Virus record (IMG/VR): IMGVR_UViG_3300032046_000001
Location: 248,001-312,000 of that record
Direction: 5' to 3' (one strand)
DNA: 64,000 bases
A program made the position numbers and the translations under genes. How positions within the stretch are numbered: position 1 is the stretch's first letter; each line of letters begins with the position of its first letter. Under the pieces are notes generated by a model, which ran no database searches, had not been told where the DNA came from, and saw nothing but the letters and a program-made list of their open reading frames with translations. Shown piece by piece: positions 1,283 to 62,481 of this stretch.

Positions 1283-1299
1283 AACTATGATACTAAAAA

Positions 1300-1761: not shown

Positions 1762-1960
1762 CCGTGCAGGAGCTATTCACAGGAATGATGCTAAAGAATC
1801 CCAACGAGTCTCGTACTCGTGTACATATCGCAGGTGTAGGAACATTGAAGGTAATATGTTCGCCTGTGTCCATAGTACCTTCAACATGCAACGTTTCTTC
1901 AAATATGGAAAGATGTTTTACCTTATCTCTTTGAGATGAATTCATTATAATTTCCTCCAT
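1706..1960 (-). CDS. Small Cys-rich putative metal-binding protein
   Basis: C-x16-CTDGCTGCG motif; paralog at 663-855. Confidence 0.75.
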   Translation of the reverse strand: MEEIIMNSSQRDKVKHLSIFEETLHVEGTMDTGEHITFNVPTPAICTRVRDSLGFFSIIPVNSSCTDGCTGCGFNIDIDLLQPF

Positions 1961-1981
1961 TTAAAGTGTGATAAAAAATAG

Positions 1982-2052
1982 TGGCACTATGGAGGATCGA
2001 ACTCCAGTTGGATGATCGAAGGTCATCTGTCCTGCCATTAGACGATAGTGCC
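1982..2052 (-). tRNA. tRNA-Glu(TTC), C33 variant
   Basis: GGCACTA/TAGTGCC acceptor, GATGA-CCTTCGA-TCATC anticodon arm; body nearly identical to tRNA-Asp at 318-389. Confidence 0.85.
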
Positions 2053-2080
2053 GAATAAAAAATTTGATTGTATTACTACT

Positions 2081-2100
2081 TTCACATATTAATATATATA
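2081..2100 (-). promoter_or_regulatory. Conserved phage promoter-like motif, copy 1
   Basis: TATATATATTAATATGTGAA in an intergenic gap upstream of tRNA-Glu; recurs 8 times. Confidence 0.75.
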
Positions 2101-2201
2101 AATGTTCATCGATATCCCAAAATCAAAAAATCAACCTTCCAACACCAAATGCCCCATAATGTTTTCCAACAGGAACACATGGCATTGGATTTAAGGGATT
2201 T

Positions 2202-3090: not shown

Positions 3091-3510
3091 TTAACTCTCA
3101 AAATCATTAATAGATTTAATTCTGAATAAATTTCCTTTTATTACAATTGAAAAATTAACAAAATAATCATATTTACGTGATGGTATTTTACTTATTACTG
3201 CAATATATCGTGGCAATACATCACTTTCTCCAAAACCACTTAATCGGCACTGCAACATTTTGTATGGATTATTATTGTATATCATAATACCCATAACTGG
3301 AAATGATTTTAAAATCGAACACTCATCACTTGTTAATGGTCCGTAACATCTTATTGCGCGTTCAATGTCATCACTACGTAATTTAAATAAAAATTCAATT
3401 GATTCTTCTCTGGAAATACCCGGAACACAATCGAGAACAAATGGAAGTAATTTCCCATCAATGTTAAGACAAACAAGAATATCTGATAATCTCATAATTA
3501 GTTCCTCCAT
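3091..3510 (-). CDS. Hypothetical protein, paralog of 2202-2606
   Basis: Alignment by eye with 2202-2606. Confidence 0.75.
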   Translation of the reverse strand: MEELIMRLSDILVCLNIDGKLLPFVLDCVPGISREESIEFLFKLRSDDIERAIRCYGPLTSDECSILKSFPVMGIMIYNNNPYKMLQCRLSGFGESDVLPRYIAVISKIPSRKYDYFVNFSIVIKGNLFRIKSINDFES

Positions 3511-3540
3511 AATTGAAGTTTAAAAAATTAATTATCCGTA

Positions 3541-3560
3541 TCATCTATTAATATATTTAG
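3541..3560 (-). promoter_or_regulatory. Conserved phage promoter-like motif, copy 2 (divergent)
   Basis: CTAAATATATTAATAGATGA upstream of the 3510 ORF. Confidence 0.5.
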
Positions 3561-3732
3561 TTTACCTCGTTTTTAATGATTATTTTATTATATCGTCTAA
3601 CAGCCTTATGTAATCTTCTCTTATTTTTTTTATGGGTTTTTTTATTTCTTTTTATATAATTAAAATTATCATCATAATTATGACCAAATAATTTTAATAA
3701 ATATACTTTCTCAAATTTACTCTTAGGTTTCA

Positions 3733-4143
3733 TTAATCGTCATATATTGGTGAAAATTTCTTTTTTAATTTTTCATATAATTCGAGTTCGTTTTGAAATT
3801 CTTTTTGATGTTTTTCTATTTCTTTTTGTTTTTCTTGTTCTTTTTCTAATTCAATTTCTTGTTGTCGTTCTTTAATTAATTTTTCGAGAATTTTTTCTTG
3901 TCCGAATAAAAGTTCATTATATTCAACAGAAAAATAATCTATTTCATCTTCGCCGTCATAATAATCATGACTGTACTGATAATAAGTTATTGTAATATAA
4001 TTATCTCCAAGACGAATTCGATTAAAATCAAAATTTATTTTAAAAAATTCAGAAAATTTTTTAGAAATTTCTTCAGCCATTTCATGGAATAATTTATGTA
4101 ATTTTTTGAAAGTTTCAATTTGTTCTTTTGTCATGTTTACCAA
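3733..4143 (-). CDS. Hypothetical protein with charged coiled-coil C-terminus
   Basis: ORF in operon-like array. Confidence 0.65.
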   Translation of the reverse strand: MVNMTKEQIETFKKLHKLFHEMAEEISKKFSEFFKINFDFNRIRLGDNYITITYYQYSHDYYDGEDEIDYFSVEYNELLFGQEKILEKLIKERQQEIELEKEQEKQKEIEKHQKEFQNELELYEKLKKKFSPIYDD

Positions 4144-17669: not shown

Positions 17670-18440
17670 TTACTCTATATTCTCATCCCATCGTACCAAT
17701 GCTATTGGAGCTAATGCCCTCTTATGCTCAGTAGCTTCCATAATTTTTGAAATTCTCACTTCGTCTGGTGTTGTAGGTGTCTTACCACTGAGATATATTT
17801 TTGTGAGAACATCATCAAGAACATCATAATTTCCGATATCATCCTCATCATAATGATTTGGTGTTAGATCAGCAGTTGGTCGCTTTGTCAGAATTTTTTC
17901 GGGAATTTGAATATAGTCGTGTTGAGTACAAAGTATATTATTATAATAATGTGCTAGACCATATACATCTCTTTTTAGTAATTCACCTAATAATTCGATA
18001 TCTGATGCTCCATCGCCGAATTTTGTAAAATATCCAGTCATAATTTCTGATAAATTACAAGTTCCAATAACTTTACTATTATGTTCATTGGCGTATGCAT
18101 ACAATAGACACATTCTTATCCTAGACATTATATTTTCTTTAGTTCCATTTTGCCATAAGATTCCGGTATTATAAAAGCTATCGTATATATTTCTAATGTT
18201 TATAATAGAGTATGATACACCGAATTGGTGTACTAGATCAATACCATCCTTAAGATGTTCATTTTCCCAATATGGCATAAGCATAGCATGAATCTTGTCT
18301 TTTCCAACAGCCTGAACAGTCATTGCGAGACAAAGAGATGAGTCAATTCCACCAGATACTCCGAGGATAAAACCACTAGATGTTTCTAATTCTTCTCTGA
18401 CAAAATCAACAATAATTTGATTCACTTTTTCATAATTCAT
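17670..18440 (-). CDS. nadE: NH3-dependent NAD+ synthetase
   Basis: LGVSGGIDS, NIMSRIRM, GYFTKFGDG, PTADL, TEHKR. Confidence 0.95.
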   Translation of the reverse strand: MNYEKVNQIIVDFVREELETSSGFILGVSGGIDSSLCLAMTVQAVGKDKIHAMLMPYWENEHLKDGIDLVHQFGVSYSIINIRNIYDSFYNTGILWQNGTKENIMSRIRMCLLYAYANEHNSKVIGTCNLSEIMTGYFTKFGDGASDIELLGELLKRDVYGLAHYYNNILCTQHDYIQIPEKILTKRPTADLTPNHYDEDDIGNYDVLDDVLTKIYLSGKTPTTPDEVRISKIMEATEHKRALAPIALVRWDENIE

Positions 18441-19044
18441 TTTCCATTCTCCTTTTTATTTTTGATACTGTTGAATGAACTACTCCGTGTTTATTTGCAA
18501 TCTGTCTTTGAGTTAAATCATCTTTTTCAATATCAATTTTTATATCAATATATTTTTGATTTGACAACCTGTTAAGATTATTTTCACTCATTATCTTTTT
18601 TGTTTTTTCTGAATGTTTTTTTCCTTTATTGCTTTCACTTATTTTTATTTTAGTTTCTTCTGAAAGTAATCTACCTTTTGGATTATGAAGTTTGTTATGT
18701 TCTTTTTTAGGTATCATTATTAAATTTTCTAAAATATTATTTTCTTTATTTCTATCTTTATCATGATGAACACATTCATCAGATTTTAATTTATAATCAT
18801 TAAAAGTTTCATAAACTAATATATGAATTTTTTTAGTTTTCTTGTTTCCATTTTTAGATAAATTAATTACAAAATAATCATCATTATCTTTATGTTGTTT
18901 TATTATTTTTCCACTTATTTTATCATATTTAAAACTTTTAACTCGACCCAGATTACTAACTTGATAATCACAATCATAATCTAAAATATCTTTCCAAATT
19001 TCATTATCTAAATCATTAATATCTAAATTTTCGTATATTTTCAT
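18430..19044 (-). CDS. NUMOD4-HNH-NUMOD3-HTH homing endonuclease
   Basis: YQVSNLGRVKS, IHILVYETF, VHH..N..EN..ENL, HSEKTKKIMS; start re-placed at MKIYEN. Confidence 0.9.
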   Translation of the reverse strand: MKIYENLDINDLDNEIWKDILDYDCDYQVSNLGRVKSFKYDKISGKIIKQHKDNDDYFVINLSKNGNKKTKKIHILVYETFNDYKLKSDECVHHDKDRNKENNILENLIMIPKKEHNKLHNPKGRLLSEETKIKISESNKGKKHSEKTKKIMSENNLNRLSNQKYIDIKIDIEKDDLTQRQIANKHGVVHSTVSKIKRRMENEL

Positions 19045-19063
19045 TTTAATGCTCCAAGTATCT

Positions 19064-19125
19064 GAAAGAAAATTTTTATAATATAAAAATGACATCTTTT
19101 TAAAACGTTATTTTACTTATTCTTT
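19064..19125. repeat. Bipartite dispersed repeat, copy 1
   Basis: gaaagaaaattttta (19064-19078) plus 29-nt tttttaaaacgttattttacttattcttt (19097-19125); also at 59837-59887. Confidence 0.8.
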
Positions 19126-19144
19126 CATAGATTAATATATATAG
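19124..19144 (-). promoter_or_regulatory. Conserved phage promoter-like motif, copy 4
   Basis: CTATATATATTAATCTATGAA upstream of HNH/nadE. Confidence 0.7.
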
Positions 19145-27221: not shown

Positions 27222-27488
27222 TTGTCACTTTCATTTTGTTCTGATTTTTCGGATGAATTAAATATCAATATACTCTCCCAATTTATCCTGTCTTCTGTAC
27301 AGAATTCTTCGTCGAACTTTGATGAGAAATTATCAATTATATTATTATATGCGATATTGAATTCATTATTTTTTCTTTTTTAAAACATCTTTTAATTTCA
27401 GATTTTTTAAATTATCTAATTTATTAATGTGATAATAGACTATATTATTATTAATATAGTCTTCAATTTGTCTTGTTAATTCATTCAT
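27218..27488 (-). pseudogene. Internally deleted type II restriction endonuclease remnant (PmeII-family-like), frameshifted in an A-tract
   Basis: Read manually: MNELTRQIEDYINNNIVYYHINKLDNLKNLKLKDVLK joined (other frame) to KNNEFNIAYNNIIDNFSSKFDEEFCTEDRINWESILIFNS; resembles the N- and C-termini of PmeII-type REases; ATGA overlaps at both ends. Confidence 0.6.
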
Positions 27489-28287
27489 ATAATAACTTTA
27501 AAATAATCATCAACTGTTTTAAAATATTCGTGATTGAGTTCTATTCCGATTCCATGACGATTTAACTTCGCAGCAACTTTTAACGTTGTACCACTTCCCA
27601 TAAACGGATCTAAAATATTATCATTGGGTTGTGTAAAAAGTTTTATAAACCATTCAGGAATCCATATTGGAAACACAGCACTATGATTTTTATTATTACA
27701 TTCAGTAGCACCATATAAGACATTAGTTGGATAAACCATATCTCTTTTGATCCAATTAGAGACGTTTTTTCCAAAACCACTTCCAACTTTCGATTGATCT
27801 CTAATTTTATCCGTTTCACTTAAATTTTTTAATCTTGATTGTGACCAATCACCAATTGGAATCATTACATTATCTTGAAACATGTTGAATTTTTTATCTT
27901 TATTGAATTGATAAAGATGTTCCCATGAATCACGAAATCTATTTGGCCATTTTCCAGGAAAACAGTTCTTTTTATGCCAGATGAATTCCTCAGTCCATAA
28001 CCATCCCTGTTTTCTCATAGCCAAAACAAGTTCTATTACATATGTATGTCTTTCTCCTCCAACTGCACACTCTTTTATATTTAAAATAAACGTACCTGTC
28101 GGTTTCAAGACTCTTAAAAGTTCTTGTGATATTGGAATAAACCATTCTATATATTTATCTGGATGTACACCACCGTATGTATTTTTCTCTGATTCGCATA
28201 TGGTGGAGATGTTAATATTAAGTCTATTGAATTACTATCTATTTCTTTTAATTTATCTGAACAATCACCAAGTAATAAACGTATCAA
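27485..28287 (-). CDS. N4-cytosine/N6-adenine DNA methyltransferase (beta class), one-base frameshift at 28182-28186
   Basis: Upstream frame has TTG start, LGDC, IDLILTSPPY; downstream frame has IWHK, HSAVFP, ILDPFMGSGTT; span of 803 nt is one base short of in-frame. Confidence 0.9.
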
Positions 28288-31092: not shown

Positions 31093-31518
31093 TTATATCC
31101 CCAATTTGTGTAAATTAAAAAAATTTGATATTTTACCAATTATTGAGTTCTCTTTTTTCTCTACCTTTTTCATATATTCTTGATGATCATATGGTTCATA
31201 CTCTATATAATTAAATGGAGTGAAATAACAATTATTTAAATTATAAGTTCTGATTAAATTTTCAATTAATTTAATTAAATCATTTGATAATACTTTATAT
31301 TTGACATTAGCTGATAAACAAAATAAATCAGTATATGGATCGGCATTACAATGATCAGCATCTAATTTAATACTAATTAATTTATTTTTGCCATCTGTTA
31401 TTCTAACTGAATATTTATCAATTATATAATTTGGATCTATTTTTGTTATTCTGTAAATTTTATTATTATGAATCATTCTCTCAGGTACAAGTTTTTTTGC
31501 TATTACAAACTGTTTCAT
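31093..31518 (-). CDS. Putative ubiquitin-conjugating E2 (UBC-fold)-like protein
   Basis: HCNADPYTDLFCL resembles the E2 HPN-x7-C active site; LIENLIRTYNLNNCY resembles I..LL..PN.DSP; TAATG-coupled to the upstream ThiF-like gene. Confidence 0.55.
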   Translation of the reverse strand: MKQFVIAKKLVPERMIHNNKIYRITKIDPNYIIDKYSVRITDGKNKLISIKLDADHCNADPYTDLFCLSANVKYKVLSNDLIKLIENLIRTYNLNNCYFTPFNYIEYEPYDHQEYMKKVEKKENSIIGKISNFFNLHKLGI

Positions 31519-32411
31519 TATGCTGCACCAGACTCTGGAAGAAGATTTATAATATAATTATTTTGAGTCTGTGTAATTGAAATGATGTAATAGAGTTCAG
31601 GTTCATTTGAATTATTTATTAGATGTGACATTGTTGAAATGATATCATTAGCTGATTGAATTGAATTTTTGGGAATTTTTCTAATTGGATATTTATTAGA
31701 ATCACCAATTGTTATTAGAACATCTTTATTTCTATTCTCCTGAATTATATCAGTTACATTCTCTTCAAAATTTAATAATTTCTTAGATGCTTCATAATCT
31801 ATAATCATGTTTCTATTATTATATTTTTTCTTGATATCATTGGATACTTCATCTAAATAATCAAGAGATATTTCTTTCACTATTTGATTATCAATCATAT
31901 AATTAATAAAACCACTTTGTAGAAAAGATGTTGCTATCATTGTTGCTTTTCTTAAATCATTTTTTGATAACAGTGTTGTATATCGGCCTTCATAATTCTT
32001 ATCATATGTTATATTTTTTCTACAATCTACAACAAGATATCTGGACGTGATATACAATCTAACATCTATTTTATTTTTGCGATTATAAACAAAATCTCGA
32101 CAATCAATTATTAAATCTGAATATGGGAGTTCCGTAATTTCTTCTTCATATCTAGTTGTTAATATTTCAACATCTATATTACTTTGATCTTTTATGATAT
32201 CATGAAGAACTGTTGTTTTATATTTTCCAACATCACTCTTTCTATATATTGAATTATATGTATTCTTCATTTCAACTCTATCATAATCAACCAAGATTAA
32301 TTTTTGTAAATTATCCAGTTCGGATAATGATTGAGACAAAAAACTACCTATGGTACCAAGACCAATAACTGCTACTGTTTTTATAGAAGATTCCTCCACA
32401 ATTTTTTTCAA
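31518..32411 (-). CDS. ThiF/MoeB (E1-like) adenylation-domain protein 2
   Basis: VAVIGLGTIGS, LVDYDRVEMKN, DVGKYKT, IIDCRD; extra C-terminal domain ending LLPESGAA. Confidence 0.88.
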   Translation of the reverse strand: MKKIVEESSIKTVAVIGLGTIGSFLSQSLSELDNLQKLILVDYDRVEMKNTYNSIYRKSDVGKYKTTVLHDIIKDQSNIDVEILTTRYEEEITELPYSDLIIDCRDFVYNRKNKIDVRLYITSRYLVVDCRKNITYDKNYEGRYTTLLSKNDLRKATMIATSFLQSGFINYMIDNQIVKEISLDYLDEVSNDIKKKYNNRNMIIDYEASKKLLNFEENVTDIIQENRNKDVLITIGDSNKYPIRKIPKNSIQSANDIISTMSHLINNSNEPELYYIISITQTQNNYIINLLPESGAA

Positions 32412-32530: not shown

Positions 32531-32558
32531 GAAGGGATGGAATTTCTTCCATCCCTTT
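32531..32558 (-). terminator. Hairpin downstream of the Ubl gene (terminator or stabiliser)
   Basis: GAAGGGATGGAA/TTCCATCCCTTT inverted repeat. Confidence 0.65.
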
Positions 32559-32606: not shown

Positions 32607-33161
32607 TTAACCCTTGCGATCGGCAGGCTTCGTGAACTCCAGGGTCAAATCAGTCGATGTCAAAACGTAGTCGTATGCTACCTCGGTCGTACCGTTGACC
32701 AAAGCTTTGGAACCGGCAGCGATATTGAACGCTCCACTGAGCAAATTGAATACTTCCTGGACTGCATGTCCTACGGTGTCTTCGATCTCCTGTTTGTTGG
32801 TACCGCAGGTAACGACAATCTTGGTGTTGACACAGCCGTCATTGGCATTGGTGACAGTAAACGTACCGGAAACCGCAGCAAGGGCAACCCTGGTAAAATG
32901 GGCAATGAGAAGTTCCACCAAAATAGCCTTGGGTTGTTTTCCCAGACCGGACATACCATTTTCCTCGGCCAGCGTGAGCAGATCGGTAACAGACATTGCA
33001 TTCAATTGTTCCCGGCTAAGAACCTCGGATTTCTCGACCATATCGTTCTCAATTACTTTGGCAATCATCTCGACGGTCTGTCCGTCCAATCCAGTGATCC
33101 CACGTCCAGCAGCGATTTGAAGAAGTTCGGCCTTTGACTTACCATTCAGTGCTTGATTCAT
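32607..33161 (-). CDS. Ubiquitin-like (beta-grasp) modifier with two N-terminal Rho-N/SAP-like repeats and C-terminal Gly
   Basis: Repeats LNGKSKAELLQIAAGRGITGL and LNAMSVTDLLTLAEENGMSGL; C-domain IVVTCG...VGHAV..V...L...FNI..ALVNG...YVL...TLEFTKPADRKG-COOH; lies in an E1/E2/JAB locus. Confidence 0.8.
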   Translation of the reverse strand: MNQALNGKSKAELLQIAAGRGITGLDGQTVEMIAKVIENDMVEKSEVLSREQLNAMSVTDLLTLAEENGMSGLGKQPKAILVELLIAHFTRVALAAVSGTFTVTNANDGCVNTKIVVTCGTNKQEIEDTVGHAVQEVFNLLSGAFNIAAGSKALVNGTTEVAYDYVLTSTDLTLEFTKPADRKG

Positions 33162-33334
33162 AAAAATAATTCTCCTTTTGGAAATAGATTAGGTTCACTA
33201 AGTGAATCCTTTGAGATAAAATACAGCGGCGACATTAATTATTTTTTTCTATCTCCTAAATAATTATAGCACCTCCCTTTGGATTTATCCATGAAGTTAG
33301 AGAGTTAAGACAACTCTCTCTTGATGGATTCTAT

Positions 33335-33601
33335 TTACTGAGTAAATTCCTGAAGCTTTTTCACTTTTCCCTCAATCCAATCAATACGATTCTTGGCATC
33401 CTGTTGACCAGCCTTAGCAGCCGAAATCTGATGATTTAGTTTCTGCACTTTTCGTGTCAAGGATTCAATTCGTTGTTCCTCCATTTGCGATGCCTGTTGA
33501 AGTTTCTTCTCAGCAACTGCAAACATTTTCAATGCGTTACCAAGAACTGTGGGAGCAACATTAATACCAAAATGAGATAATAAAATATAAAACCAGTCCA
33601 T
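33335..33601 (-). CDS. Small coiled-coil protein upstream of the Ubl gene
   Basis: GGAGG RBS; heptad-rich; follows promoter copy 5. Confidence 0.75.
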   Translation of the reverse strand: MDWFYILLSHFGINVAPTVLGNALKMFAVAEKKLQQASQMEEQRIESLTRKVQKLNHQISAAKAGQQDAKNRIDWIEGKVKKLQEFTQ

Positions 33602-33643
33602 TACAGACCTCCTTTACAATATTAAAAAGTACGAATTGTACCT

Positions 33644-33665
33644 TTCACATATTTATTATATATAG
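33644..33665 (-). promoter_or_regulatory. Conserved phage promoter-like motif, copy 5 (variant)
   Basis: CTATATATAATAAATATGTGAA upstream of the coiled-coil/Ubl unit. Confidence 0.6.
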
Positions 33666-33717: not shown

Positions 33718-34419
33718 CTATACTGGGAACTGTTTGGCTAAAACTTCACCTGTGAGAATATCGAAATCATTCTCACAGGTGGTATCGAGTTGACCAAGGA
33801 TACAGATCTTGTAAAATCGACACAACACAATCCATGCCGCTCCCATGTTTGCGAATAACAATTGTGGTTCTGCTTGATGCAATGCCTCACATCCGAGACG
33901 CTGAGGGTGTTGTCCATCACCAACGGATATCTCTTCATGGTATCTGGTAATTGACGCAGTGTAGTTTTGTCCTGCAATCCGAACGTTTGTCAAAACATCG
34001 CCGGTGTAGAATCCATTACCCCCAGAAATTAAAACTACATTTTGCAGGGTAGCAACTTTTTCTGCAATCAACGCTCTGGTATCATGATTGTCAACACACA
34101 CTAATACAATATCATCTTCTTGGATGATACTACTAATGTTGCTCTCACTGAGATATTCAGGAACCGAATGGATAGTTAAATCATACTTCTGCATGAGTTC
34201 GGTGGCTTTAATCTCGGCTTTATTACCGAAGTTATAAAAATCCTGTCTCTCCCGATTACGCTGCTCGAAGCTATCTCCGTCTACGATAGTTACCTCGAAG
34301 GTGTCAGCCTCTTCGCCTTCTGCTGGTTGCGGATGATAATAATTGAGGAATTGGCACAACGGATCAAGTAATTTAGTACCAATACCACCAGCACCTATAA
34401 CTTTAATCGACCGATTCAT
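33718..34419 (-). CDS. ThiF/E1-like ubiquitin-activating enzyme (PRTRC ThiF-like)
   Basis: VIGAGGIG, VDGDSFEQRNRERQ, NKAE, CVDNHDTR, ISGGN, candidate catalytic Cys in RLGCEA, PQLLFAN. Confidence 0.92.
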   Translation of the reverse strand: MNRSIKVIGAGGIGTKLLDPLCQFLNYYHPQPAEGEEADTFEVTIVDGDSFEQRNRERQDFYNFGNKAEIKATELMQKYDLTIHSVPEYLSESNISSIIQEDDIVLVCVDNHDTRALIAEKVATLQNVVLISGGNGFYTGDVLTNVRIAGQNYTASITRYHEEISVGDGQHPQRLGCEALHQAEPQLLFANMGAAWIVLCRFYKICILGQLDTTCENDFDILTGEVLAKQFPV

Positions 34420-35611
34420 ATGCTGAAATCTCCTCTTTTGTCATAATGATTACTCCTTCAGAGTCAATCATGTTGCCATTAGAATCATATGATAATTCAA
34501 AATCGCGGTTGTTGTTTGGTGTGTGTTCACCATAACATCCCATAGTTGTCAATAATAAGTCATCGACCAATCCACCTTCCATTGCCTGAATAGCAATATT
34601 ACGATAATGACACTTTGGACAGATGGTATAATCAATTAGTGGATAATAATCTGTATCATCACTACCATAACAATCAGGACGGGCAATTGGAGATGTTGGT
34701 GAATATTCAGGAGTTTTAGCAGGACTTGGAAGATACTTCGTTTCCGACGGAACATATGTGTTGTTTGATTGGGAAGAACATTTGATAAGTTTACCACCAA
34801 CGAATTTATATACTACATCGGGTGTATAAACCATGTTCTCATACCATTCTATGGGAACCTCAACAGCATCCATATCAACGTCTAAACTAAAATGAAATTT
34901 AGTTGCAACCGATTGCGCTGTTACATCTGTCATATTATGAGTCGATACTTTAGATGCGGCATAATCTTCCCATACAGCACCCGAAGACACATACTTGGTT
35001 TCTTCCCGACTTGTGATTGTAACATCAAGATATCTTAATATTTCCTCCTCTTTAAGTTGAAATCTATTGCCGTTAATAACAATCGCTGCCGTGACCGATG
35101 GGGTATCTGTATTTATGTGTCCAAACACAATATGAATACCATCCAACTCACCCTCACTACCTTTGTCGGTACCACTATGAAACGCCGACATTGCACCACC
35201 GTGTGAGTGTAGTGTTCCAACATACATAAAATCTTTCGGTGGACTGGAATTCTTCCAATCCGTTGACGCGCCCGAAATTTTCTGATTGGGAACATCAAAT
35301 AAATAAAACTCGGTATATGGATTATAGAAAATCCGTATACCAGCTTCAGATTTGTACGTTTCATAGATCTGTTTGAAAAACTTAAGACCTTGAGCTAACA
35401 AATCTTTGTGAATCTTCGGTATCTTCATCTCCCCAAACGGTTGTAGTTTGGGGAGATGACTGATTCCATTAACCTTAGTTAAACTTCTCAATAATTGTTG
35501 ATTCTTTAGAACAAAGTTGCCGTTACCGGCAACGATGTATAAAAGATCCTGGTCTTCAGGCAAGACATAATCCTTCGGTAATATAATAACAGGAATTTCA
35601 CCAAATTTCAT
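34403..35611 (-). CDS. JAB/JAMM (MPN+) metallo-isopeptidase, PRTRC protein A-like, with C-terminal extension
   Basis: YIVAGNG.F, KSEAG, VPNQKIS, GTLHSHGGAMSAFHSGTDKGSE, GIHIVFG; start re-placed at MKFGE. Confidence 0.9.
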   Translation of the reverse strand: MKFGEIPVIILPKDYVLPEDQDLLYIVAGNGNFVLKNQQLLRSLTKVNGISHLPKLQPFGEMKIPKIHKDLLAQGLKFFKQIYETYKSEAGIRIFYNPYTEFYLFDVPNQKISGASTDWKNSSPPKDFMYVGTLHSHGGAMSAFHSGTDKGSEGELDGIHIVFGHINTDTPSVTAAIVINGNRFQLKEEEILRYLDVTITSREETKYVSSGAVWEDYAASKVSTHNMTDVTAQSVATKFHFSLDVDMDAVEVPIEWYENMVYTPDVVYKFVGGKLIKCSSQSNNTYVPSETKYLPSPAKTPEYSPTSPIARPDCYGSDDTDYYPLIDYTICPKCHYRNIAIQAMEGGLVDDLLLTTMGCYGEHTPNNNRDFELSYDSNGNMIDSEGVIIMTKEEISAYESVD

Positions 35612-35612
35612 A

Positions 35613-38027
35613 TTAATTATCCTCACTAACATTTGGAATTGTTGATGGATAATATCCATCAGAAAACGTATGAGTATTCCCATTTACAAAATTCGGGAGA
35701 CTCTCATAAACAACATGTGAATGGTTTTTAGATAATCTGGGGTCTAAAATACCATATCTCTTAAAATCTGGATTATTCTGTGAACTTACCACAGCCTTTG
35801 AACGGAAAGATCCTGTTTTCACAAAAACAGGATCAATTAACATATACAACTTTCCGAGGTATGTGTTGTCATCATTGAAAACGAATAAATTATCACTTTT
35901 GGTACATAGATCACCTGTCTGCCAAGGAATCTTGGCCAAGTTTATTGTTTCGGGTGTTCTGGCTGATGTAACTACGTTGAAGTTATTGGTTAAATCTTCA
36001 ACAGTAATTGTCAGACCATTTCCACACAATATAAGAGGCTTTTCACCATCGACAATAAATGCGTCAATTCTGTTTATCACCTTTTTCGGAAATCCTAATA
36101 TTCCAGGATTCTTAGCTTGGATAAGACCAACTTCAATACCATTCAGAGACTTGGATGCTTTCCTAATAGATCCGATGTAAACTCTACCGTTTGATAGGTT
36201 GATATATTGAGAACTAGTTGTTTCTTCACCACATCGTAATTCAAAATTCAAATAACCATTTGATCTGGCAAATGCTGTAATCGTCCAGATTTTACCAATT
36301 GTATCAGGATTGTTCCAGTTAGGACATACAACCTCATCACCAACACTGAAATTGATATCGACATCATATGATGGTATATGTAACTTGGTACCATCATTCG
36401 TCAATATATCCTCAAGTGCTGTTTCGCGGAAGAAAGTACTGCTCCAGATATTGGATGAGTCGTTACTGGAAAAAATGCCTATGCCTTTTACAATACGAAA
36501 ATCTCGATCGGTTATAATCTGATCCAAAAATCTGAATGTTCTGGATTGAGTAATCCTTGGGTCATTTGCTTCAAAAATTGAGAAATCACCATTATAGATT
36601 GAATCTACAGAGATTCCTCGCTCATCACCATCACCACCGAAGAATATGTGGAGAATGTTGTAAGAATTATTCTGAATACGAAGCATTCTCCCGGTGAAGT
36701 AGGTCCGATATTGATTATTAAAGATCACATAATCCTTACCAGAAACCAATTCAGTATCGCCAGCCTTCACAGAATCGATTACGTCATATGTACCATCCAA
36801 TGCCAGAAAGAACTTTGAACCGATGACGAATTCAATCGTATTATCTCTGGCTAACCTAATCTTATCTACAACCTCATAGGTATTCATAGATTTGATTTTG
36901 ATTATTGTGCCTGATGATACGGTTTTACCATCAACTGTTAATGATTGTAAATAATTCGTTCTTTGAGCGGCAACATCTGTTTCCCATTGGGCTAATAAGG
37001 CTGGTGTTAACTCAACAGTAATTTTTTCATTATTGAGATTAACCAGTTCCACCTGTTTAGGTGTATTAAAATTTCCCCTAATGGTATCAATATACCAATC
37101 TGCTTCTTCATATATTAATTTGTCGCCAATACTTACGACGCTCTCAACTAACCTGAAATTTTGATATATGGTTGATCCATTACCTCCAGATAGTTGTTCG
37201 TCAAGTGGTACAACAAACACTCTCTCAAAGGTTGGAACTGTTCTAGAGACAACAAAAGTATCAATCTCCTGATACAATGTTTTATCGTGCATTATCAATG
37301 GAATGTTAAATCCGAATGTTGGTTTTTGACTAGCCATTGACCAAGCCAGAAAGGAATTCATCGGCGGTGTATTCTTGTATTTATCATGACGACAGCGATA
37401 TTCCGCTGCAAATGGTGCTGCCCAATACAGAGCAATTAATTCTTCAACAGCAGATGACAGAGTATGAGTTTGTTTTGACCATGAACGTTTGTTACCACCA
37501 AAACAAACTTCATTGCCACTACTAACATTAAATAAATTTGCATATCCCAAATAGTCGCCGGATGCTCCCAATGGATGATTTCGGAAAAATACCCGACAAT
37601 AGGGAACTTCAAATACATCCTTTTTTTCCTGAACGAAGAGAAGAAACACTATATATGGTAATTGGATTCGGAGCGAGTACGGTATTTGTTGCCCTTCCAG
37701 CAACGATTCTAGTCCTAGTGCCGCCTGTCCACTCTTCTTGGTTGTTCTTGTTTCTTCAACAAAATCCCAGTCAAACTTCAAATGTCTTGATCTTGGAGCT
37801 TCCTCAATAACCAGAACTCTTGCACCACCTGAGCATGGAATATTTAATCTACAATTCCTGGGCAAAACATGACAGTCAGATCCCAACTGACTGGTAATTC
37901 GGGCAATATAATCTGCTGTTCGTATTAATTTTTTCCTGAAGACTGGTTGGGCTTCACCATTTTCTCCAATAATGGATTCAACAAACGATGTAGTTTCTTT
38001 GTCGATTATTAACGTGGGATTTGTCAT
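35613..38027 (-). CDS. Prokaryotic E2 family D-like (PRTRC protein B-like) domain fused to ~550 aa of uncharacterised beta-rich domains
   Basis: LPYIVFL, FFRNHPL, YANLFNVSSGNEVCFG, YWAAPF..WS..S in the N-terminal ~250 aa. Confidence 0.75.
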   Translation of the reverse strand: MTNPTLIIDKETTSFVESIIGENGEAQPVFRKKLIRTADYIARITSQLGSDCHVLPRNCRLNIPCSGGARVLVIEEAPRSRHLKFDWDFVEETRTTKKSGQAALGLESLLEGQQIPYSLRIQLPYIVFLLFVQEKKDVFEVPYCRVFFRNHPLGASGDYLGYANLFNVSSGNEVCFGGNKRSWSKQTHTLSSAVEELIALYWAAPFAAEYRCRHDKYKNTPPMNSFLAWSMASQKPTFGFNIPLIMHDKTLYQEIDTFVVSRTVPTFERVFVVPLDEQLSGGNGSTIYQNFRLVESVVSIGDKLIYEEADWYIDTIRGNFNTPKQVELVNLNNEKITVELTPALLAQWETDVAAQRTNYLQSLTVDGKTVSSGTIIKIKSMNTYEVVDKIRLARDNTIEFVIGSKFFLALDGTYDVIDSVKAGDTELVSGKDYVIFNNQYRTYFTGRMLRIQNNSYNILHIFFGGDGDERGISVDSIYNGDFSIFEANDPRITQSRTFRFLDQIITDRDFRIVKGIGIFSSNDSSNIWSSTFFRETALEDILTNDGTKLHIPSYDVDINFSVGDEVVCPNWNNPDTIGKIWTITAFARSNGYLNFELRCGEETTSSQYINLSNGRVYIGSIRKASKSLNGIEVGLIQAKNPGILGFPKKVINRIDAFIVDGEKPLILCGNGLTITVEDLTNNFNVVTSARTPETINLAKIPWQTGDLCTKSDNLFVFNDDNTYLGKLYMLIDPVFVKTGSFRSKAVVSSQNNPDFKRYGILDPRLSKNHSHVVYESLPNFVNGNTHTFSDGYYPSTIPNVSEDN

Positions 38028-39152: not shown

Positions 39153-39419
39153 CTACTTCTTCTTAGTCTTTTCTCGTGGGAAATAGGCGGGTGATTGTAG
39201 ATAATCCTTCATCCAGTGATTTCTTTCAGCCTTCTGGAAGTTCTGATACTGATCATAATTCATGCCATAATTATGATAATACTCGGCATCCCGCTCCAAT
39301 TTGTTTTGACCACAACCAAATATAGGCATAAATAACAAAACACATACAATACATATGAAATAATTTTTCATAAATTTTCTCCTATAAAGGGAAGGAAAAT
39401 ATTTCTCCTTCCCAGTCAA
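39153..39419 (-). CDS. Putative lipoprotein (start probably at MKNYF)
   Basis: Lipobox IFGC. Confidence 0.65.
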   Translation of the reverse strand: MTGKEKYFPSLYRRKFMKNYFICIVCVLLFMPIFGCGQNKLERDAEYYHNYGMNYDQYQNFQKAERNHWMKDYLQSPAYFPREKTKKK

Positions 39420-39450
39420 TAAATCTGGTTGATGGTCTGATCAATCAGAA

Positions 39451-40446
39451 TTAAAAGGTGTATGTCAAAGCACCAATGCTCTGGTTCTGACTAAGTTGCC
39501 AATCGGCATAGTGTGTCAGTTCGAGGTCGAGATTTTTGATTCCAGTTGGTAAAGTAATCGCTACTGCATGACCATTATCGAATGGGAAATCAATATCAGC
39601 CATTATTGATTTCGAATCAATTTCTCGATAATTATAGTCAACTGTTACCTCACCTATTCCTAACTTGGCACCAGCCAACCAGGACACAACATTATCACCA
39701 ACAGTCACAGCATAATCACCGTATATAGATGATGTATCATAGCCGATTTCAGCCATTGCCTCCCTATAGGCATTCCCTTCATAGAAATCATAATATCCGA
39801 CTGCTCCAACAATATATGCCTTATCGCCGATCTGGATGCCGATCTGACCACCATTCATAACATCATTGAAATATCCACCAGTGGCAAAACACGAAAGAGT
39901 CCGGTCATCATTAACAGCGAAATAGTTGGATGCAACACCTTCTCCACGAAAGACATCAGTATCGAACAAAAGACCAGAATCACCAGGAGTCTGAAATGGT
40001 AATTCGCTTTTACCGAGATGTAATTCAAGACCTGGAAACAAATCCGGGGTAATATTCAAATTGGCAACATCAATCATGGCATCATCTTGTTGTTGATCAC
40101 CAACTTGTTGGGTTCCAGTATTAAGTCGAAAATACAAATCGGCCTGATTATCCAAAGCAATACCGAGGCCAAACCGGATGCGATAATCCTGGGAATATTC
40201 ATTGAGTTGGTGATCATACAATGTGCGATAACGGGCATCACCATCAACAAAGAATTTAGAAGGATCTGTAACGCCGGGATTTTCTCTCTCGAAAATTTCC
40301 CACTCTTCCTCAGCGGTTTCAGCATAGACGGTATCCTCAGTTCTGAGACTGGTGGTTGTACCTTCTTCATAGGTGTTGAAAGCATAGACATTGATATGAG
40401 CAAAGAGCACCAACAATAAAACAAACACGACATAATACTTTTTCAT
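39451..40446 (-). CDS. Outer-membrane beta-barrel protein (putative porin family)
   Basis: Signal peptide AYA-like cleavage, GDARYR, RIRFGLG, GKSELPF..LLFDTD, alternating beta strands, C-terminal LTYTF. Confidence 0.8.
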   Translation of the reverse strand: MKKYYVVFVLLLVLFAHINVYAFNTYEEGTTTSLRTEDTVYAETAEEEWEIFERENPGVTDPSKFFVDGDARYRTLYDHQLNEYSQDYRIRFGLGIALDNQADLYFRLNTGTQQVGDQQQDDAMIDVANLNITPDLFPGLELHLGKSELPFQTPGDSGLLFDTDVFRGEGVASNYFAVNDDRTLSCFATGGYFNDVMNGGQIGIQIGDKAYIVGAVGYYDFYEGNAYREAMAEIGYDTSSIYGDYAVTVGDNVVSWLAGAKLGIGEVTVDYNYREIDSKSIMADIDFPFDNGHAVAITLPTGIKNLDLELTHYADWQLSQNQSIGALTYTF

Positions 40447-49628: not shown

Positions 49629-50306
49629 TTATAATTTAATATGTGACCACGATCTTCCAGTTTTTATCGCTGAAATTGTTAATTGACTAACTCCAAACAT
49701 ATCAGCTATTTCTTGTTGAGTTAATATTCCCTCTTTTAATAATAATTTTATTTGAATCACTTGTTCTTCTGTTAGTTTGTGATTTGTAGAATTTTCTCCT
49801 CTTAAAATTTTTAATTCGCCACTTTTAAATTTTTCTTTTCTACTTTCACTTATTTTCGTTATTGTTTCTTTAGAATGATGTTCTCCTTTCTTTTTTTCAC
49901 TGATTTTCTTTTTTGTTTCTTTTGATATATTTTTCATATGTAGTTTTTGATGTTCAGATTTTGACATCATCATTAAATTATCTAAATTATTATTTTCTTT
50001 CGAAATTTCTGGAAGTATATTTATAAAATCAATATGATGAACATCTTCATCTGATTTTAATTTATAATTATTATGAGTTTCAAAAACTAATCGATGAACT
50101 TGTTTAGGTTTACATTTTCCATTTTTACAAAAATCAACTCTAAAATATTCTCCACCATGTTTTTGTTGTTTTAATATTCTCTCTTTTCCAAATTTTAATG
50201 ATTTAACTCTACCTAAATTACTCACATAATAATCTGAAAAATCTTCTATAACTTTCCATATTTCATTTTCTAAATCATTAATATCTAAATTTTCATATAT
50301 TTTCAT
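49629..50306 (-). CDS. NUMOD4-HNH-NUMOD3-HTH homing endonuclease
   Basis: YYVSNLGRVKS, VHRLVFETH, VHHID..NNNLDNL, HSKETITKIS, C-terminal HTH. Confidence 0.9.
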   Translation of the reverse strand: MKIYENLDINDLENEIWKVIEDFSDYYVSNLGRVKSLKFGKERILKQQKHGGEYFRVDFCKNGKCKPKQVHRLVFETHNNYKLKSDEDVHHIDFINILPEISKENNNLDNLMMMSKSEHQKLHMKNISKETKKKISEKKKGEHHSKETITKISESRKEKFKSGELKILRGENSTNHKLTEEQVIQIKLLLKEGILTQQEIADMFGVSQLTISAIKTGRSWSHIKL

Positions 50307-58748: not shown

Positions 58749-58922
58749 TTAACCTACGTTCTCCTTTAATGATATTTCTTTTTTTTGCGTTTAGTCTGTT
58801 TTAAATATAAGTTTGAAAAAAATAAAATTAAGTTATCTTATATAAATACACCTCCAAAAATATTTAAAAAATTTGGAAAAAAATTGATTTTGAATTGATA
58901 TTTTTTCAAACATCAATTCTCT

Positions 58923-58943
58923 ATCACAAATTAATATATATAG
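58923..58943 (-). promoter_or_regulatory. Conserved phage promoter-like motif, copy 7
   Basis: CTATATATATTAATTTGTGAT. Confidence 0.75.
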
Positions 58944-60439: not shown

Positions 60440-60485
60440 AGTTCCTCCTAAAAAAAATTATAAAAAAAATTTGAATATTTTACTA

Positions 60486-60506
60486 TTCGCTTATTAATAT
60501 ATATAG
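60486..60506 (-). promoter_or_regulatory. Conserved phage promoter-like motif, copy 8
   Basis: CTATATATATTAATAAGCGAA upstream of pyrE. Confidence 0.7.
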
Positions 60507-61550: not shown

Positions 61551-62481
61551 TTATACCTTTATATAAGACCAATTTTTTCCAGTTTTTATATGTGAAATCG
61601 TCATTTGACTAACTCCAAACATTTTTGGCTATTTTTCTTTGAGATATTTTTCCTTCTTTTAATAATAATTTTATTTGAATAACTTGTTCTTCTGTTAATT
61701 TATGATTTGGTCTATTTTCACCTCTTAATTTTTCACTCACCAATTCTCTACCACAAATAAAACATCCATGATTTTGTTGAAAACTATTCCAAATAACGAA
61801 ACCATTATGTCCTTTTGGACAAATATATTCTAATTTTGTGATGCTATTTTTATATTTATTTTCTTTAGATAATAATTTATAACCTCTCCTTTCAAATTCT
61901 TTTTTAATATCTGAGAAATCTTTTTTATTTTTTTCATCTTCACATGTAGGACAACAACATCCTTGTTGAAAACTACTCCATACAATATAATTTTCGTGTC
62001 CTTCTTGACAAATATATTTTAATTTTGTTTTATTATTTTTATAATCTTTTTCTTCTGTTAATAAAATATAACCTCTTCTTTCAAATTCTTTTTTAATTTC
62101 TTGAAAGTTTTTTCTTTGTTTTTTTAGTTGTTCTTCTGAAAATTTATAACCACTTATTCCATCACCACCATCAGTCATATTAAGAAGAATTTCAAAATTT
62201 TCTTTTCTTATTTCATTAATATATTCAATTTCTTTTTTTAAAGATTCTTTTTCATTTAAATTTTCATATAATTTTATTACTATTGGTTCCAATCCAGATT
62301 TTTTGATTTTATTTATTTTATTTTTAAAATATTTATTTCTTCCCCATTTAATTTCTTTCCATCTATCTTTTTTCCCTTTTCCAACATAAAAAGGTTCATA
62401 TAAAAAACATAGATCCTTATAACAATATCTTCCAGATTTTCTTGGATCTAAATAAATATAAATATAATAATTATTCACCAT
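61551..62481 (-). CDS. GIY-YIG homing endonuclease with two Zn-ribbon repeats and C-terminal HTH (one-base frameshift at 61622-61626)
   Basis: YYIYIYLDPRK..FYVGKGK..R, LNMTDGGDG, two IKKEFERRGY.LL...C..GH..W.SFQQ..C..C repeats; removing one A restores MFGVSQMTISHIKTGKNWSYIKV. Confidence 0.88.

What the first reader, a model, noticed from the sequence alone, without database searches (positions are those of the whole stretch)
32607..33161. Ubiquitin-like tag carrying two Rho-N/SAP-like nucleic-acid-binding repeats, in its own transcription unit
Seen: two ~35-aa helix-extension-helix repeats precede the Ubl domain. The gene is visibly GC-richer than the genome, lies behind promoter copy 5 with a strong AAGGAG RBS, and is followed by a hairpin, so it can be expressed independently of E1/E2/JAB, as expected for a stoichiometric modifier. 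The C-terminal Gly is already exposed, so JAB would act as a deconjugase rather than a maturase. Inference: conjugation would graft a DNA/RNA-binding module onto targets, for example tethering proteins to the phage genome. That would be an unusual Ubl function.
Basis: partly seen in the sequence, partly recalled or inferred. Interest (0 to 1): 0.8.

Follow-up and report, generated by a model that had tools for sequence, protein, structure and literature searches.

The report
Phage ubiquitin-like tag with HeH domains
A 312-kb uncultivated phage encodes a small ubiquitin-like protein with two helix-extension-helix modules in front; it is the tag of a complete phage-borne E1/E2/peptidase set that sits next to the viral RNA polymerase genes in more than 80 related phages, and I found no description of it in the literature I could search.

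Summary
The gene is real: window 32607-33161, minus strand, 184 aa. An AlphaFold model built with 52 relatives has a mean pLDDT of 82. Residues 1-45 and 48-93 each superpose on the N-terminal helix bundle of Rho (Z 7.4-8.2, rmsd 1.5 A). Residues 120-184 superpose on ubiquitin/MoaD, with the C-termini coinciding.

The protein ends in Lys-Gly. That ending is conserved in about 130 relatives, a third of which carry 1-5 extra residues. One relative is a head-to-tail double unit, like polyubiquitin.

In all 80 IMG/VR loci found with the family, the recognised genes lie on one strand in the same order. The order is radical SAM, E2 (Prok-E2_D fused to a large unknown domain), JAB, E1, HeH-Ubl, a second ThiF, a small HPN...Cys E2-like protein, then RNA polymerase beta' and beta.

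The tag gene is the most GC3-rich gene of the block in 69 of 78 loci. The closest curated relative is the uncharacterised PRTRC cassette of plasmids; Bil models do not match.

Nucleic-acid binding is untested, and this copy is acidic (pI 4.85). The "own transcription unit" claim is only partly borne out, and JAB is a maturase in relatives.

Verdict: a new variant of prokaryotic ubiquitin-like conjugation, with high interest.

The parts
32607..33161 (-). HeH-HeH-Ubl gene, 184 aa, ending in Lys-Gly followed by a stop
   Evidence: ORF and sequence; 7 close and 49 distant relatives; AF2 model with pLDDT 82
33027..33149 (-). HeH repeat 1 (residues about 5-45), a divergent copy with net charge -2
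   Evidence: Superposes on the Rho helix bundle, Z 7.4, rmsd 1.5 A; HeH profile i-E 1.8e-5; charge
32883..33020 (-). HeH repeat 2 (residues 48-93), the canonical copy that keeps the family's conserved Lys pair (GLGKQPK)
   Evidence: Z 8.2 to Rho 1-46; Pfam Rho_N 21.8 bits, below the 24.9 cut-off; HeH profile 2.8e-17
32610..32873 (-). Beta-grasp ubiquitin-like domain (residues 97-184) with an exposed C-terminal Gly
   Evidence: Z about 6 to ubiquitin 9-76 and to MoaD, with the C-termini aligned; ThiS Pfam hits in relatives; K183 invariant and G184 in more than 90%
33172..33177 (-). Shine-Dalgarno AAGGAG, 10 nt before the ATG
   Evidence: Read directly from the sequence
33263..33291 (-). Sigma-70-like site (TGGATA, 17 nt spacer, TGcTATAAT); a single consensus match, function unproven
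32532..32557 (-). 3' hairpin with an 11-bp stem and GAAA loop; no U-tract on this strand
   Evidence: Fold dG -24.9 kcal/mol, z -5.5; relative L007 has a canonical terminator at the same place
33335..33601 (-). 88-aa protein with a hydrophobic N-terminus and a coiled coil, inserted between E1 and the tag gene in this clade only
   Evidence: not seen in L007 or L009, and the E1-to-tag gap has a median of 19 nt across the IMG/VR loci
33642..33664 (-). One copy of the repeated phage intergenic motif (candidate phage promoter), upstream of the 88-aa ORF
   Evidence: 4 strict matches against 0.13 expected; 5 aligned copies
33718..34419 (-). E1 (ThiF-type adenylating enzyme, 233 aa) with GxGxxG, DxD, N..RQ, K and DN..R motifs and a conserved loop Cys
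   Evidence: Pfam ThiF 3.9e-13; NCBIfam PRTRC_ThiF 1.3e-10; alignment
34403..35683 (-). JAB/JAMM peptidase (HxH...S..D motif) with a variable C-terminal part; the true start is probably some 20 codons downstream of 35683
   Evidence: Prok-JAB, weak; NCBIfam PRTRC_A 2e-10 over 184 of 192 profile positions; the homologue in L001 is 404 aa
35613..38027 (-). E2 of family Prok-E2_D (residues about 1-290, invariant Cys175) fused to a domain of about 510 aa of unknown function, which is a separate ORF in L007
38057..39040 (-). Radical SAM/SPASM-like enzyme, the first gene of the conserved block
   Evidence: Pfam 1.1e-8; NCBIfam, weak; present in 64 of 80 loci
31518..32411 (-). Second ThiF-family protein (297 aa), which keeps the nucleotide-binding motifs but lacks the RQ arginine
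   Evidence: Pfam ThiF 7.4e-13; PADLOC Cap2-type E1-E2 models 9e-9; alignment; found in 80 of 80 loci
31093..31518 (-). Small E2-like protein (141 aa) with an H-(P/C)-N...x8...C signature
   Evidence: H56, N58 and C67 are invariant and P57 occurs in 76 of 78 homologues; no fold evidence

Best explanation
The gene encodes the modifier of a phage-encoded ubiquitin-like conjugation pathway.

Shown here:
- The protein is a beta-grasp with a free, conserved Lys-Gly C-terminus, preceded by two Rho-N-type helix-extension-helix modules.
- It sits in a gene block that is fixed across a large clade of uncultivated phages. The order is radical SAM, E2(Prok-E2_D)+unknown domain, JAB, E1, tag, second ThiF, HPN-Cys small protein, RNAP beta', RNAP beta.

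Inferred mechanism:
- The 233-aa E1 adenylates Gly184 and takes the tag onto its loop cysteine.
- The tag then passes to Cys175 of the E2 domain. The fused 510-aa domain of that protein selects the target or is the target.
- JAB trims precursors in relatives that carry tails or tandem units, and it reverses conjugation.
- The second ThiF and the HPN-Cys protein provide either a second E1/E2 route or a degenerate partner subunit for the E1.
- The HeH modules do not belong to the beta-grasp core, since cellular relatives lack them. They most likely act as docking modules that place the free or conjugated tag on DNA or on a DNA- or RNA-bound complex. The fixed position beside the RNA polymerase genes makes the transcription/replication machinery the first candidate.
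- The strongly raised GC3 suggests that the tag is made in much larger amounts than its enzymes.
For: - Fold.
- Conserved KG end, with 0-5-residue tails.
- Tandem di-(HeH-Ubl) precursor in L068, and tag-plus-basic-tail fusions in L028 and P0015.
- E1 motifs and loop Cys.
- E2: Prok-E2_D hits in 12 of 28 homologues (best 4.8e-6) and an invariant Cys175; structural match with TM 0.72 by hit.
- JAB matches PRTRC_A at 2e-10.
- Same order and same strand of the recognised genes in 80 IMG/VR loci and in 5 further metagenomic loci, while RNAP beta' is only 51-57% identical and the tag has a median identity of 31%.
- Stand-alone Ubl relatives without HeH occur in cellular operons of the form E2D, JAB, E1, Ubl.
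- GC3 of the tag is the highest in the block in 69 of 78 loci.
- HeH is regarded as a DNA-binding fold, and the Rho-N type is listed among nucleic-acid-binding modules: paper 10.64898/2026.10.19.760177.
Against: - There is no biochemical or transcript evidence. The RNA-labelled runs gave only two short contigs, and those runs had been selected with this very gene.
- The HeH repeats of this copy are net acidic, and charge is not conserved in the family.
- In Rho, as far as I know, RNA is bound by the OB fold that follows the bundle rather than by the bundle itself.
- The beta1-beta2 part of the model has low confidence (pLDDT 44-68).
- Foldseek E-values are weak (0.04 or higher).
- No target is identified.
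- The role of the second ThiF and the small E2-like protein rests on motifs alone.
Confidence: 0.6

Rival explanations
1. The protein is a conjugated tag, but the HeH modules are protein-protein docking or self-association modules rather than nucleic-acid binders. They might recruit the tag to its own E1/E2, to RNA polymerase, or build multivalent assemblies.
For: Both repeats are acidic, and charge varies from pI 4.2 to 9.9 across the family. Bacterial Ubls carry other N-terminal modules thought to mediate self-association, such as coiled coils, DUF1508 and N/G-rich tails (PMC11601603). A few relatives have a separate HeH-only ORF with an acidic tail in the same block.
Against: A Lys pair in the loop after helix 1 (GMSKxRK; GLGKQPK here) is invariant or nearly so in the single-HeH subfamily. 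HeH, SAP and LEM-like folds are best known as DNA binders.
Confidence: 0.25
2. The protein is a sulfur carrier of the ThiS/MoaD type. E1 would adenylate it and it would be thiocarboxylated, delivering sulfur to a pathway that involves the neighbouring radical SAM enzyme, for example modification of a nucleic acid to which the HeH modules bind.
For: Pfam ThiS is the best beta-grasp hit among relatives. NCBIfam ranks ThiF and MoeB models high for the E1. A radical SAM gene is the first gene of the block in 64 of 80 loci. JAB peptidases also process some sulfur carriers (PMC1779556).
Against: Two E2-like proteins with invariant cysteines are fixed in the block. The end is Lys-Gly rather than Gly-Gly. 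No rhodanese or desulfurase was seen in the block. A tandem precursor is typical of conjugated tags.
Confidence: 0.08
3. The block is an arms-race device rather than a housekeeping part of the phage. It could be a phage-borne Bil-like exclusion system against competing phages, or a counter-defence that tags or de-tags host immunity proteins.
For: All characterised bacterial E1/E2/JAB/Ubl operons act in phage defence (PMC10557695; 10.1101/2023.09.04.556158). The second ThiF resembles the E1 part of CBASS Cap2.
Against: No Bil model matches above noise. The position and order are invariant across phages whose RNAP beta' is only about 53% identical, which is the behaviour of a core module and not of a variable accessory island. 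No effector or CD-NTase was recognised in the block.
Confidence: 0.12

Closest known systems
PRTRC cassette (ParB-related, ThiF-related cassette of plasmids and ICEs; operon type 6b of Iyer et al. 2006, PMC1779556)
   Same: The JAB aligns with PRTRC protein A over almost the whole model (2e-10), the E1 with PRTRC_ThiF (1e-10 to 1e-12), and the stand-alone E2 of L007 weakly with PRTRC protein B (0.008). PRTRC protein C of plasmid pSMJS2 is a 69-aa protein ending ...EFREANYGDKG, the same ..EF......KG end as this tag. Both are carried by mobile elements.
   Different: All scores are far below NCBIfam cut-offs. There is no ParB-family partner and no protein E or F in the phage block. The tag has HeH modules, the E2 is fused to a 510-aa domain, and the block has an extra ThiF, an HPN-Cys protein and a radical SAM enzyme. 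It is linked to RNA polymerase genes. PRTRC itself has no known function.
Bil (type I and II BilABCD) and Bub ubiquitination-like operons of bacteria
   Same: A complete set of Ubl, E2, JAB and E1. Type II Bil Ubls have a conserved Gly followed by up to nine residues (PMC10557695), and some Ubls have N-terminal add-on domains (PMC11601603).
   Different: PADLOC Bil models do not match: there is no hit for the tag, JAB or E2, and only a marginal BilD hit for the second ThiF. The gene order differs. The system is phage-encoded and core to its lineage rather than a bacterial defence island. An HeH add-on is not among the architectures listed in that survey.
Polyubiquitin and ubiquitin-fusion precursors of eukaryotes
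   Same: Relative L068 encodes two full HeH-Ubl units head to tail, joined directly after the terminal Gly. L028 and P0015 carry a basic tail of about 65 aa after the Gly. This is formally like polyubiquitin and ubiquitin-ribosomal-protein fusions (own knowledge).
   Different: Each unit includes an HeH module. The end is Lys-Gly rather than Gly-Gly. Processing would be by a JAB metalloprotease.
N-terminal helix bundle of transcription termination factor Rho (Pfam Rho_N), and SAP/HeH/LEM-like domains
   Same: Both repeats superpose on Rho residues 1-46 at 1.5 A. 39 of 52 family members hit Pfam Rho_N (best 8e-18) and 8 hit SAP.
   Different: No OB-fold RNA-binding domain and no ATPase follow the bundle. 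The window protein itself scores below the Pfam cut-off. Fusion to a conjugatable beta-grasp was not found in the papers searched. In the SUMO pathway the SAP domain sits on the PIAS E3 ligase and not on the modifier (own knowledge).

Membership tests
Ubiquitin-like beta-grasp modifiers (Ub/ThiS/MoaD superfamily) | Beta-grasp fold | tested here: met
   AF2 model residues 120-184 align to ubiquitin 9-76 and to MoaD with Z about 6. Pfam ThiS hits occur in 10 of 52 relatives, best 7e-6. The beta1-beta2 part has low confidence.
Ubiquitin-like beta-grasp modifiers (Ub/ThiS/MoaD superfamily) | Conserved C-terminal glycine, free or followed by a short removable tail | tested here: met
   K183 is invariant and G184 is present in more than 90% of 52 sequences. 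Of 78 IMG/VR homologues, 51 end in KG, 19 in KGC, 7 have other short tails and one does not end in KG.
Ubiquitin-like beta-grasp modifiers (Ub/ThiS/MoaD superfamily) | Cognate E1 adenylating enzyme with intact active site | tested here: met
   The adjacent ThiF-family gene has GxGxxG, DxD, N..RQ, K, DN..R and a conserved loop Cys. It is adjacent in 76 of 80 loci, with a median gap of 19 nt.
Ubiquitin-like beta-grasp modifiers (Ub/ThiS/MoaD superfamily) | Covalent attachment to targets | not testable with these tools
   Needs biochemistry or proteomics.
Rho_N / HeH (helix-extension-helix) domains | Fold of the Rho N-terminal helix bundle | tested here: met
   Both repeats give Z 7.4-8.2 and rmsd 1.5 A over 45-46 residues.
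Rho_N / HeH (helix-extension-helix) domains | Pfam PF07498 at its gathering score | tested here: not met
   The window protein scores 21.8 bits against a cut-off of 24.9, and only for repeat 2. Relatives do match: 39 of 52 at E of 0.01 or better, best 8e-18.
Rho_N / HeH (helix-extension-helix) domains | Binding of nucleic acid | not testable with these tools
   The indirect evidence is mixed. A conserved Lys pair is present in repeat 2, but the net charges are -2 and -1 and the pI is 4.85.
PRTRC system | Proteins A, B, C and ThiF at NCBIfam cut-offs | tested here: not met
   Protein A scores 40.6 against 101.8 and ThiF 41 against 144.75. Protein B scores 15.6 against 131 (L007 only). Protein C has no hit; hhalign against one PRTRC protein C is not significant.
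PRTRC system | ParB-family partner in the cassette | tested here: not met
   None of the block's proteins hit a ParB model in Pfam or NCBIfam. The canonical cassette on pSMJS2 has one.
Bil (BilABCD) defence system | Match to BilA, BilB, BilC and BilD models | tested here: not met
   PADLOC gives no hit for the tag, JAB or E2. BilD scores 0.001 for the second ThiF only.
Type II CBASS (Cap2/Cap3) | E1-E2 fusion acting on a CD-NTase | tested here: not met
   The second ThiF hits only the E1 part of Cap2 models (9e-9). Here E1 and E2 are separate genes, and no CD-NTase was recognised among the block's genes.
Sulfur-carrier proteins ThiS/MoaD | Gly-Gly end and a sulfur-transfer partner, with no E2 | tested here: not met
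   The end is Lys-Gly. Two E2-like proteins with invariant Cys are fixed in the block. Sulfurtransferases elsewhere in the genome were not searched for.

The most novel reading that the evidence does not exclude
A large clade of big phages runs its own ubiquitin-like signalling system as a core function. An abundant tag with a built-in DNA-binding-type module would be written onto transcription or replication proteins, or onto host nucleoid proteins, by a two-subunit E1 (an active ThiF plus a degenerate ThiF). Two E2s would take part, one of them carrying the eukaryote-type HPN...Cys active site. JAB would erase the mark. In effect this would be a viral, SUMO-like chromatin or transcription mark in bacteria.
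Probability: 0.2. Interest if true: 0.9.

Novelty: new variant of a known kind. Interest (0 to 1): 0.74.

Why it matters
All characterised prokaryotic E1/E2/Ubl systems (CBASS Cap2/3, Bil) are bacterial weapons against phages. Here the whole machinery belongs to the phage. It has been kept in one place beside the phage RNA polymerase genes while the proteins diverged to 25-55% identity, and its tag carries an extra module of a fold known for DNA binding.

If conjugation is shown, three things would follow:
- It would be a virus-encoded ubiquitin-like pathway in bacteria with a core rather than accessory role.
- It would give a handle on the function of the long-unexplained PRTRC cassettes of plasmids.
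- It would provide a minimal, experimentally tractable model of a modifier that brings its own targeting domain.

The HPN...Cys small protein also bears on how early the canonical E2 active site arose.

Tried and rejected
- Single-sequence AF2 gave an unusable model (pLDDT 41). It was replaced by a run with a 52-sequence alignment.
- Sequence searches of the PDB with the tag, with the profile of the small E2-like protein and with the E2-fusion profile found nothing meaningful.
- Foldseek against PDB and Swiss-Prot gave only weak E-values, 0.03 or higher. The VIA-align second look was needed.
- tblastn of the tag and two distant relatives against 50,697 GenBank phage records gave no match. No cultured phage with this system was found.
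- PADLOC gave nothing for the tag, JAB or E2.
- RNA evidence: no RNA run was listed for the 5.8-kb block. Two RNA-labelled wastewater runs, chosen with this gene, held only a 163-nt and a 202-nt contig inside the gene, and the tool marks them 'probably DNA'. I treat this as uninformative.
- BLASTP between the two repeats gave no alignment.
- A 16-mer around the sigma-70-like site has no other copy in the window, so it is not a repeated promoter.
- ESM Atlas gave no lead for the 141-aa protein and only sub-threshold leads (small beta-barrel/FCCH-like, virion proteins) for the 510-aa domain. Pfam finds nothing in that domain in 28 homologues.
- hhalign of the family profile against one PRTRC protein C was not significant. 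The shared KG end is a lead and not proof of homology.
- ORFs in the gap between the tag gene and the second ThiF in relatives are variable accessory genes, unrelated to the 88-aa protein or to the basic tails.
- Recent horizontal transfer as the cause of the high GC was rejected. The anomaly recurs at this one gene in distant relatives whose neighbouring E1, JAB and E2 genes have background composition (L007, L005).
Full report
**What is there**

The finding's coordinates hold one ORF on the minus strand, 32607-33161. It is 184 aa long, starts with ATG and ends ...ADRKG followed by TAA. AAGGAG lies 10 nt before the ATG (33172-33177).

The window is a 29% GC stretch in which all genes run on the minus strand. 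It carries a tRNA cluster, topoisomerase II, a helicase, SbcCD, NAD-salvage genes and unsplit RNA polymerase beta and beta' genes. It belongs to IMG/VR contig IMGVR_UViG_3300032046_000001, which is 312,420 bp long. The source is therefore an uncultivated jumbo phage; the DNA runs that hold the gene come from sediment, soil, freshwater and wastewater.

**Fold**

A single-sequence AlphaFold run failed. With an alignment of 52 relatives (A2) the model reached a mean pLDDT of 82.

- Residues 1-45 and 48-93 each superpose on residues 1-46 of E. coli Rho, at Z 7.4-8.2 and rmsd 1.5 A.
- Residues 120-184 superpose on ubiquitin 9-76 and on MoaD at Z about 6, with the C-termini coinciding.
- Pfam gives Rho_N below its threshold for this protein (21.8 against 24.9 bits). 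It gives Rho_N in 39, ThiS in 10 and SAP in 8 of the 52 relatives.
- A profile of the family's HeH unit hits both repeats. BLASTP sees no similarity between them.
- Repeat 2 keeps the loop Lys pair that is almost invariant in the family. Repeat 1 has lost it.

**Family and the C-terminus**

An exhaustive phmmer search found 49 cluster representatives. A word-indexed search found 7 close relatives. An IMG/VR scan with a sub-alignment found 80 viral loci.

- Nearly all members are one HeH unit plus a beta-grasp. The window's clade has two HeH units.
- K183 is invariant and G184 is present in more than 90%.
- Of 78 IMG/VR homologues, 51 end in KG, 19 in KGC, 7 carry other short tails and one does not end in KG.
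- P0006, a close relative, has KG followed by YNG.
- L068 encodes two complete HeH-Ubl units joined directly after the Gly. L028 and P0015 carry a basic tail of about 65 residues after the Gly.
- These precursors need a protease that cuts after the Gly. JAB is therefore a maturase in the family, even though this particular copy needs none.

**Neighbourhood**

Pfam, NCBIfam, Atlas structure matches and alignments identify the neighbours as follows.

- 33718-34419 is a ThiF-type E1 with every adenylation motif and a conserved loop Cys.
- 34403-35683 is a JAB peptidase that aligns end to end with PRTRC protein A (2e-10).
- 35613-38027 is a Prok-E2_D domain with an invariant Cys175, fused to a domain of about 510 aa of unknown function. 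That domain is a separate ORF in L007.
- On the other side, 31518-32411 is a second ThiF that lacks the RQ arginine.
- 31093-31518 is a 141-aa protein in which H56, N58 and C67 are invariant and P57 is present in 76 of 78 homologues. That is the HPN...Cys signature of canonical E2 enzymes. There is no fold evidence for it.

I built HMMs from these proteins and ran them on six-frame ORFs of the 80 IMG/VR loci. In every locus the recognised genes lie on one strand in the same order. That order is radical SAM, E2+domain, JAB, E1, HeH-Ubl, second ThiF, small E2-like protein, rpoC, rpoB. Genes are missing only where the contig ends or, in a few loci (the small E2-like protein in L063 and L092, the tag in L088 and L091), where the profile found no match. 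Five further metagenomic loci show the same order.

Relative to the window, RNAP beta' is 51-57% identical, E1 has a median identity of 41%, the tag 31% and the E2 fusion 25%. This is an old, core module of the lineage and not a recent island.

Stand-alone Ubl relatives without HeH (P0050, P0060) lie in cellular contigs beside ribosomal protein genes. P0060 sits in an E2D, JAB, E1, Ubl operon; for P0050 only the E1 and the Ubl are seen before the contig ends. The HeH module therefore looks like an addition made in phages.

**Composition and expression signals**

- The tag gene has GC 0.49 and GC3 0.535, against a GC3 of about 0.13-0.2 for its flanks.
- The same holds in distant relatives whose E1, JAB and E2 genes have background composition (L007: 0.44 against 0.17-0.21). 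The tag has the highest GC3 of the block in 69 of 78 IMG/VR loci.
- Recent transfer cannot explain a recurring, gene-specific anomaly of this kind. Codon selection for high expression is the simplest reading, but it is an inference.
- The repeated phage motif CTATATATATTAAT..TGAAAG has five intergenic copies. Its nearest copy, at 33642-33664, lies upstream of the 88-aa ORF.
- Directly upstream of the tag there is only one sigma-70-like extended -10 (33263-33271) and a weak hairpin.
- Downstream there is a strong hairpin at 32532-32557 without a U-tract on this strand. L007 has a canonical terminator at the same place.
- In relatives, E1 and the tag are a median of 19 nt apart.
- The unit probably ends after the tag. 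It begins at or before the 88-aa gene here, and within the E1 operon elsewhere.
- Public RNA runs gave nothing usable.

**Does it bind nucleic acid?**

This is untested. The domain-family view supports the idea: HeH domains bind DNA, and the Rho-N type is listed among nucleic-acid-binding modules (10.64898/2026.10.19.760177).

Three points weigh against a simple charge-driven binder. Both repeats here are net acidic (-2 and -1). The protein has pI 4.85. Family pI ranges from 4.2 to 9.9. To my knowledge, Rho binds RNA through the OB fold that follows the bundle and not through the bundle itself. A protein-docking role is a serious rival.

**Comparison with what is known**

- The closest curated relative is the PRTRC cassette of plasmids and ICEs (operon type 6b in PMC1779556). 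Its proteins A, B and ThiF are the best NCBIfam matches, though all fall far below the cut-offs.
- Its protein C on plasmid pSMJS2 ends in ..EF......DKG like the phage tag.
- The phage block has no ParB partner. PRTRC has no known function.
- Bil models do not match.
- Type II Bil Ubls share the 'conserved Gly plus short tail' feature. Bacterial Ubls with N-terminal coiled-coil, DUF1508 or N/G-rich add-ons have been described (PMC11601603), but HeH is not among them.
- Searches of the paper library for phage-encoded Ubl systems, for Rho_N together with ubiquitin-like, and for huge phages with ThiF returned nothing relevant.

**Verdict**

The structural observation is right, and the modifier reading is strongly supported by comparative evidence. 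The transcription-unit and deconjugase-only claims need correction. DNA tethering remains an attractive but untested idea. I rate this a new variant of prokaryotic ubiquitin-like conjugation, with high interest.

Noticed in passing
window 31093-31518 (-) and 31518-32411 (-): The 141-aa protein carries an invariant H-P-N...x8...C signature, as in canonical UBC E2 enzymes, across 78 homologues; the window copy itself reads H-C-N. It always follows a second ThiF protein that keeps the nucleotide-binding motifs but lacks the RQ arginine. This pair could be a second E1/E2 route, or the second ThiF could be a degenerate partner subunit of the E1.
   Followed up: partly
L068:8001-8960 (IMGVR_UViG_3300033146_002768): A 319-aa ORF made of two complete HeH-Ubl units head to tail, joined directly after the terminal ...KPAGRKG. 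This is a polyubiquitin-like precursor.
   Followed up: partly
L028 (209-aa tag ORF) and protein P0015: The tag is followed, after the KG, by a basic Lys/Ala-rich tail of about 65 aa. The two unrelated contigs share a motif in this tail (MKE.HNR..V..KHK). This resembles ubiquitin-fusion proteins; the identity of the tail is unknown.
   Followed up: no
L070, L074, L075, L078, around 3336-3776: An extra ORF of 120-146 aa lies between the radical SAM and E2 genes. It consists of one HeH unit plus an acidic, Pro-rich tail.
   Followed up: no
window 32607-33161 and the homologous gene in 78 loci: The tag gene is the most GC3-rich gene of its block in 69 of 78 loci, with a median excess of 0.14. This holds even where all neighbours have background composition. 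The gene-specific, lineage-wide codon anomaly remains unexplained; high expression is a guess.
   Followed up: partly
window 33335-33601 (-): An 88-aa protein with a hydrophobic N-terminus and a coiled coil is inserted between E1 and the tag. It was seen only in the clade that also has the doubled HeH (window, L001, L002, L005).
   Followed up: no
window 27485-28108 and 28147-28287 (-): A DNA adenine methyltransferase appears to be split. A 46-aa ORF carrying the SPPY motif is followed, after a stop and a short gap, by a 207-aa ORF that matches the C-terminal part of CcrM-type enzymes. It lies between the rpoB and rpoC genes; in L001 the two are only about 20 nt apart.
   Followed up: no
window 39153-40446 (-): Two GC-rich genes lie inside the phage: a 331-aa protein with a signal peptide that looks like a beta-barrel protein, and an 88-aa lipoprotein-like protein. 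They look like host-derived morons. A homologue of similar size occupies the same position in L001 and L002.
   Followed up: no
window 2079-2101, 19122-19144, 33642-33664, 58921-58943, about 60470-60492 (-): Five intergenic copies of CTATATATATTAAT..TGAAAG; four fit the strict pattern, against 0.13 expected by chance. This is a candidate promoter for the phage's own RNA polymerase.
   Followed up: partly
window 152-2052 (-): A cluster of seven tRNA genes: His, Lys, Asp, Leu, Trp, Ile(tat) and Glu.
   Followed up: no
window 18430-19095 vs 49629-50306, and 61609-62481: Diverged paralogous genes and repeat blocks, 76-90% identical over 60-160 nt, are shared between distant parts of the window.
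   Followed up: no
L009:14122-17292: The RNA polymerase beta' gene of this relative carries an intein (Pfam Intein_splicing). L002 has an HNH/NUMOD4 homing endonuclease gene between the tag and the small E2-like gene.
   Followed up: no
L011:6682-10270 and L010:275-1209: Cellular contigs, with ribosomal proteins, SecY, MraZ and PBP nearby, carry relatives of the system with a 73-89-aa tag that lacks HeH. L011 has the full four-gene form (an unknown N-terminal domain fused to E2D, then JAB, E1 and Ubl); L010 shows only E1 and Ubl before the contig ends. These may be the cellular source of the phage block or a sister to it.
   Followed up: partly
L094:4496-4705 (plasmid pSMJS2, NZ_CP123446.1): The annotated PRTRC system protein C ends ...EFREANYGDKG, the same Lys-Gly end as the phage tag. 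This suggests that PRTRC protein C is also a conjugatable Ubl.
   Followed up: partly
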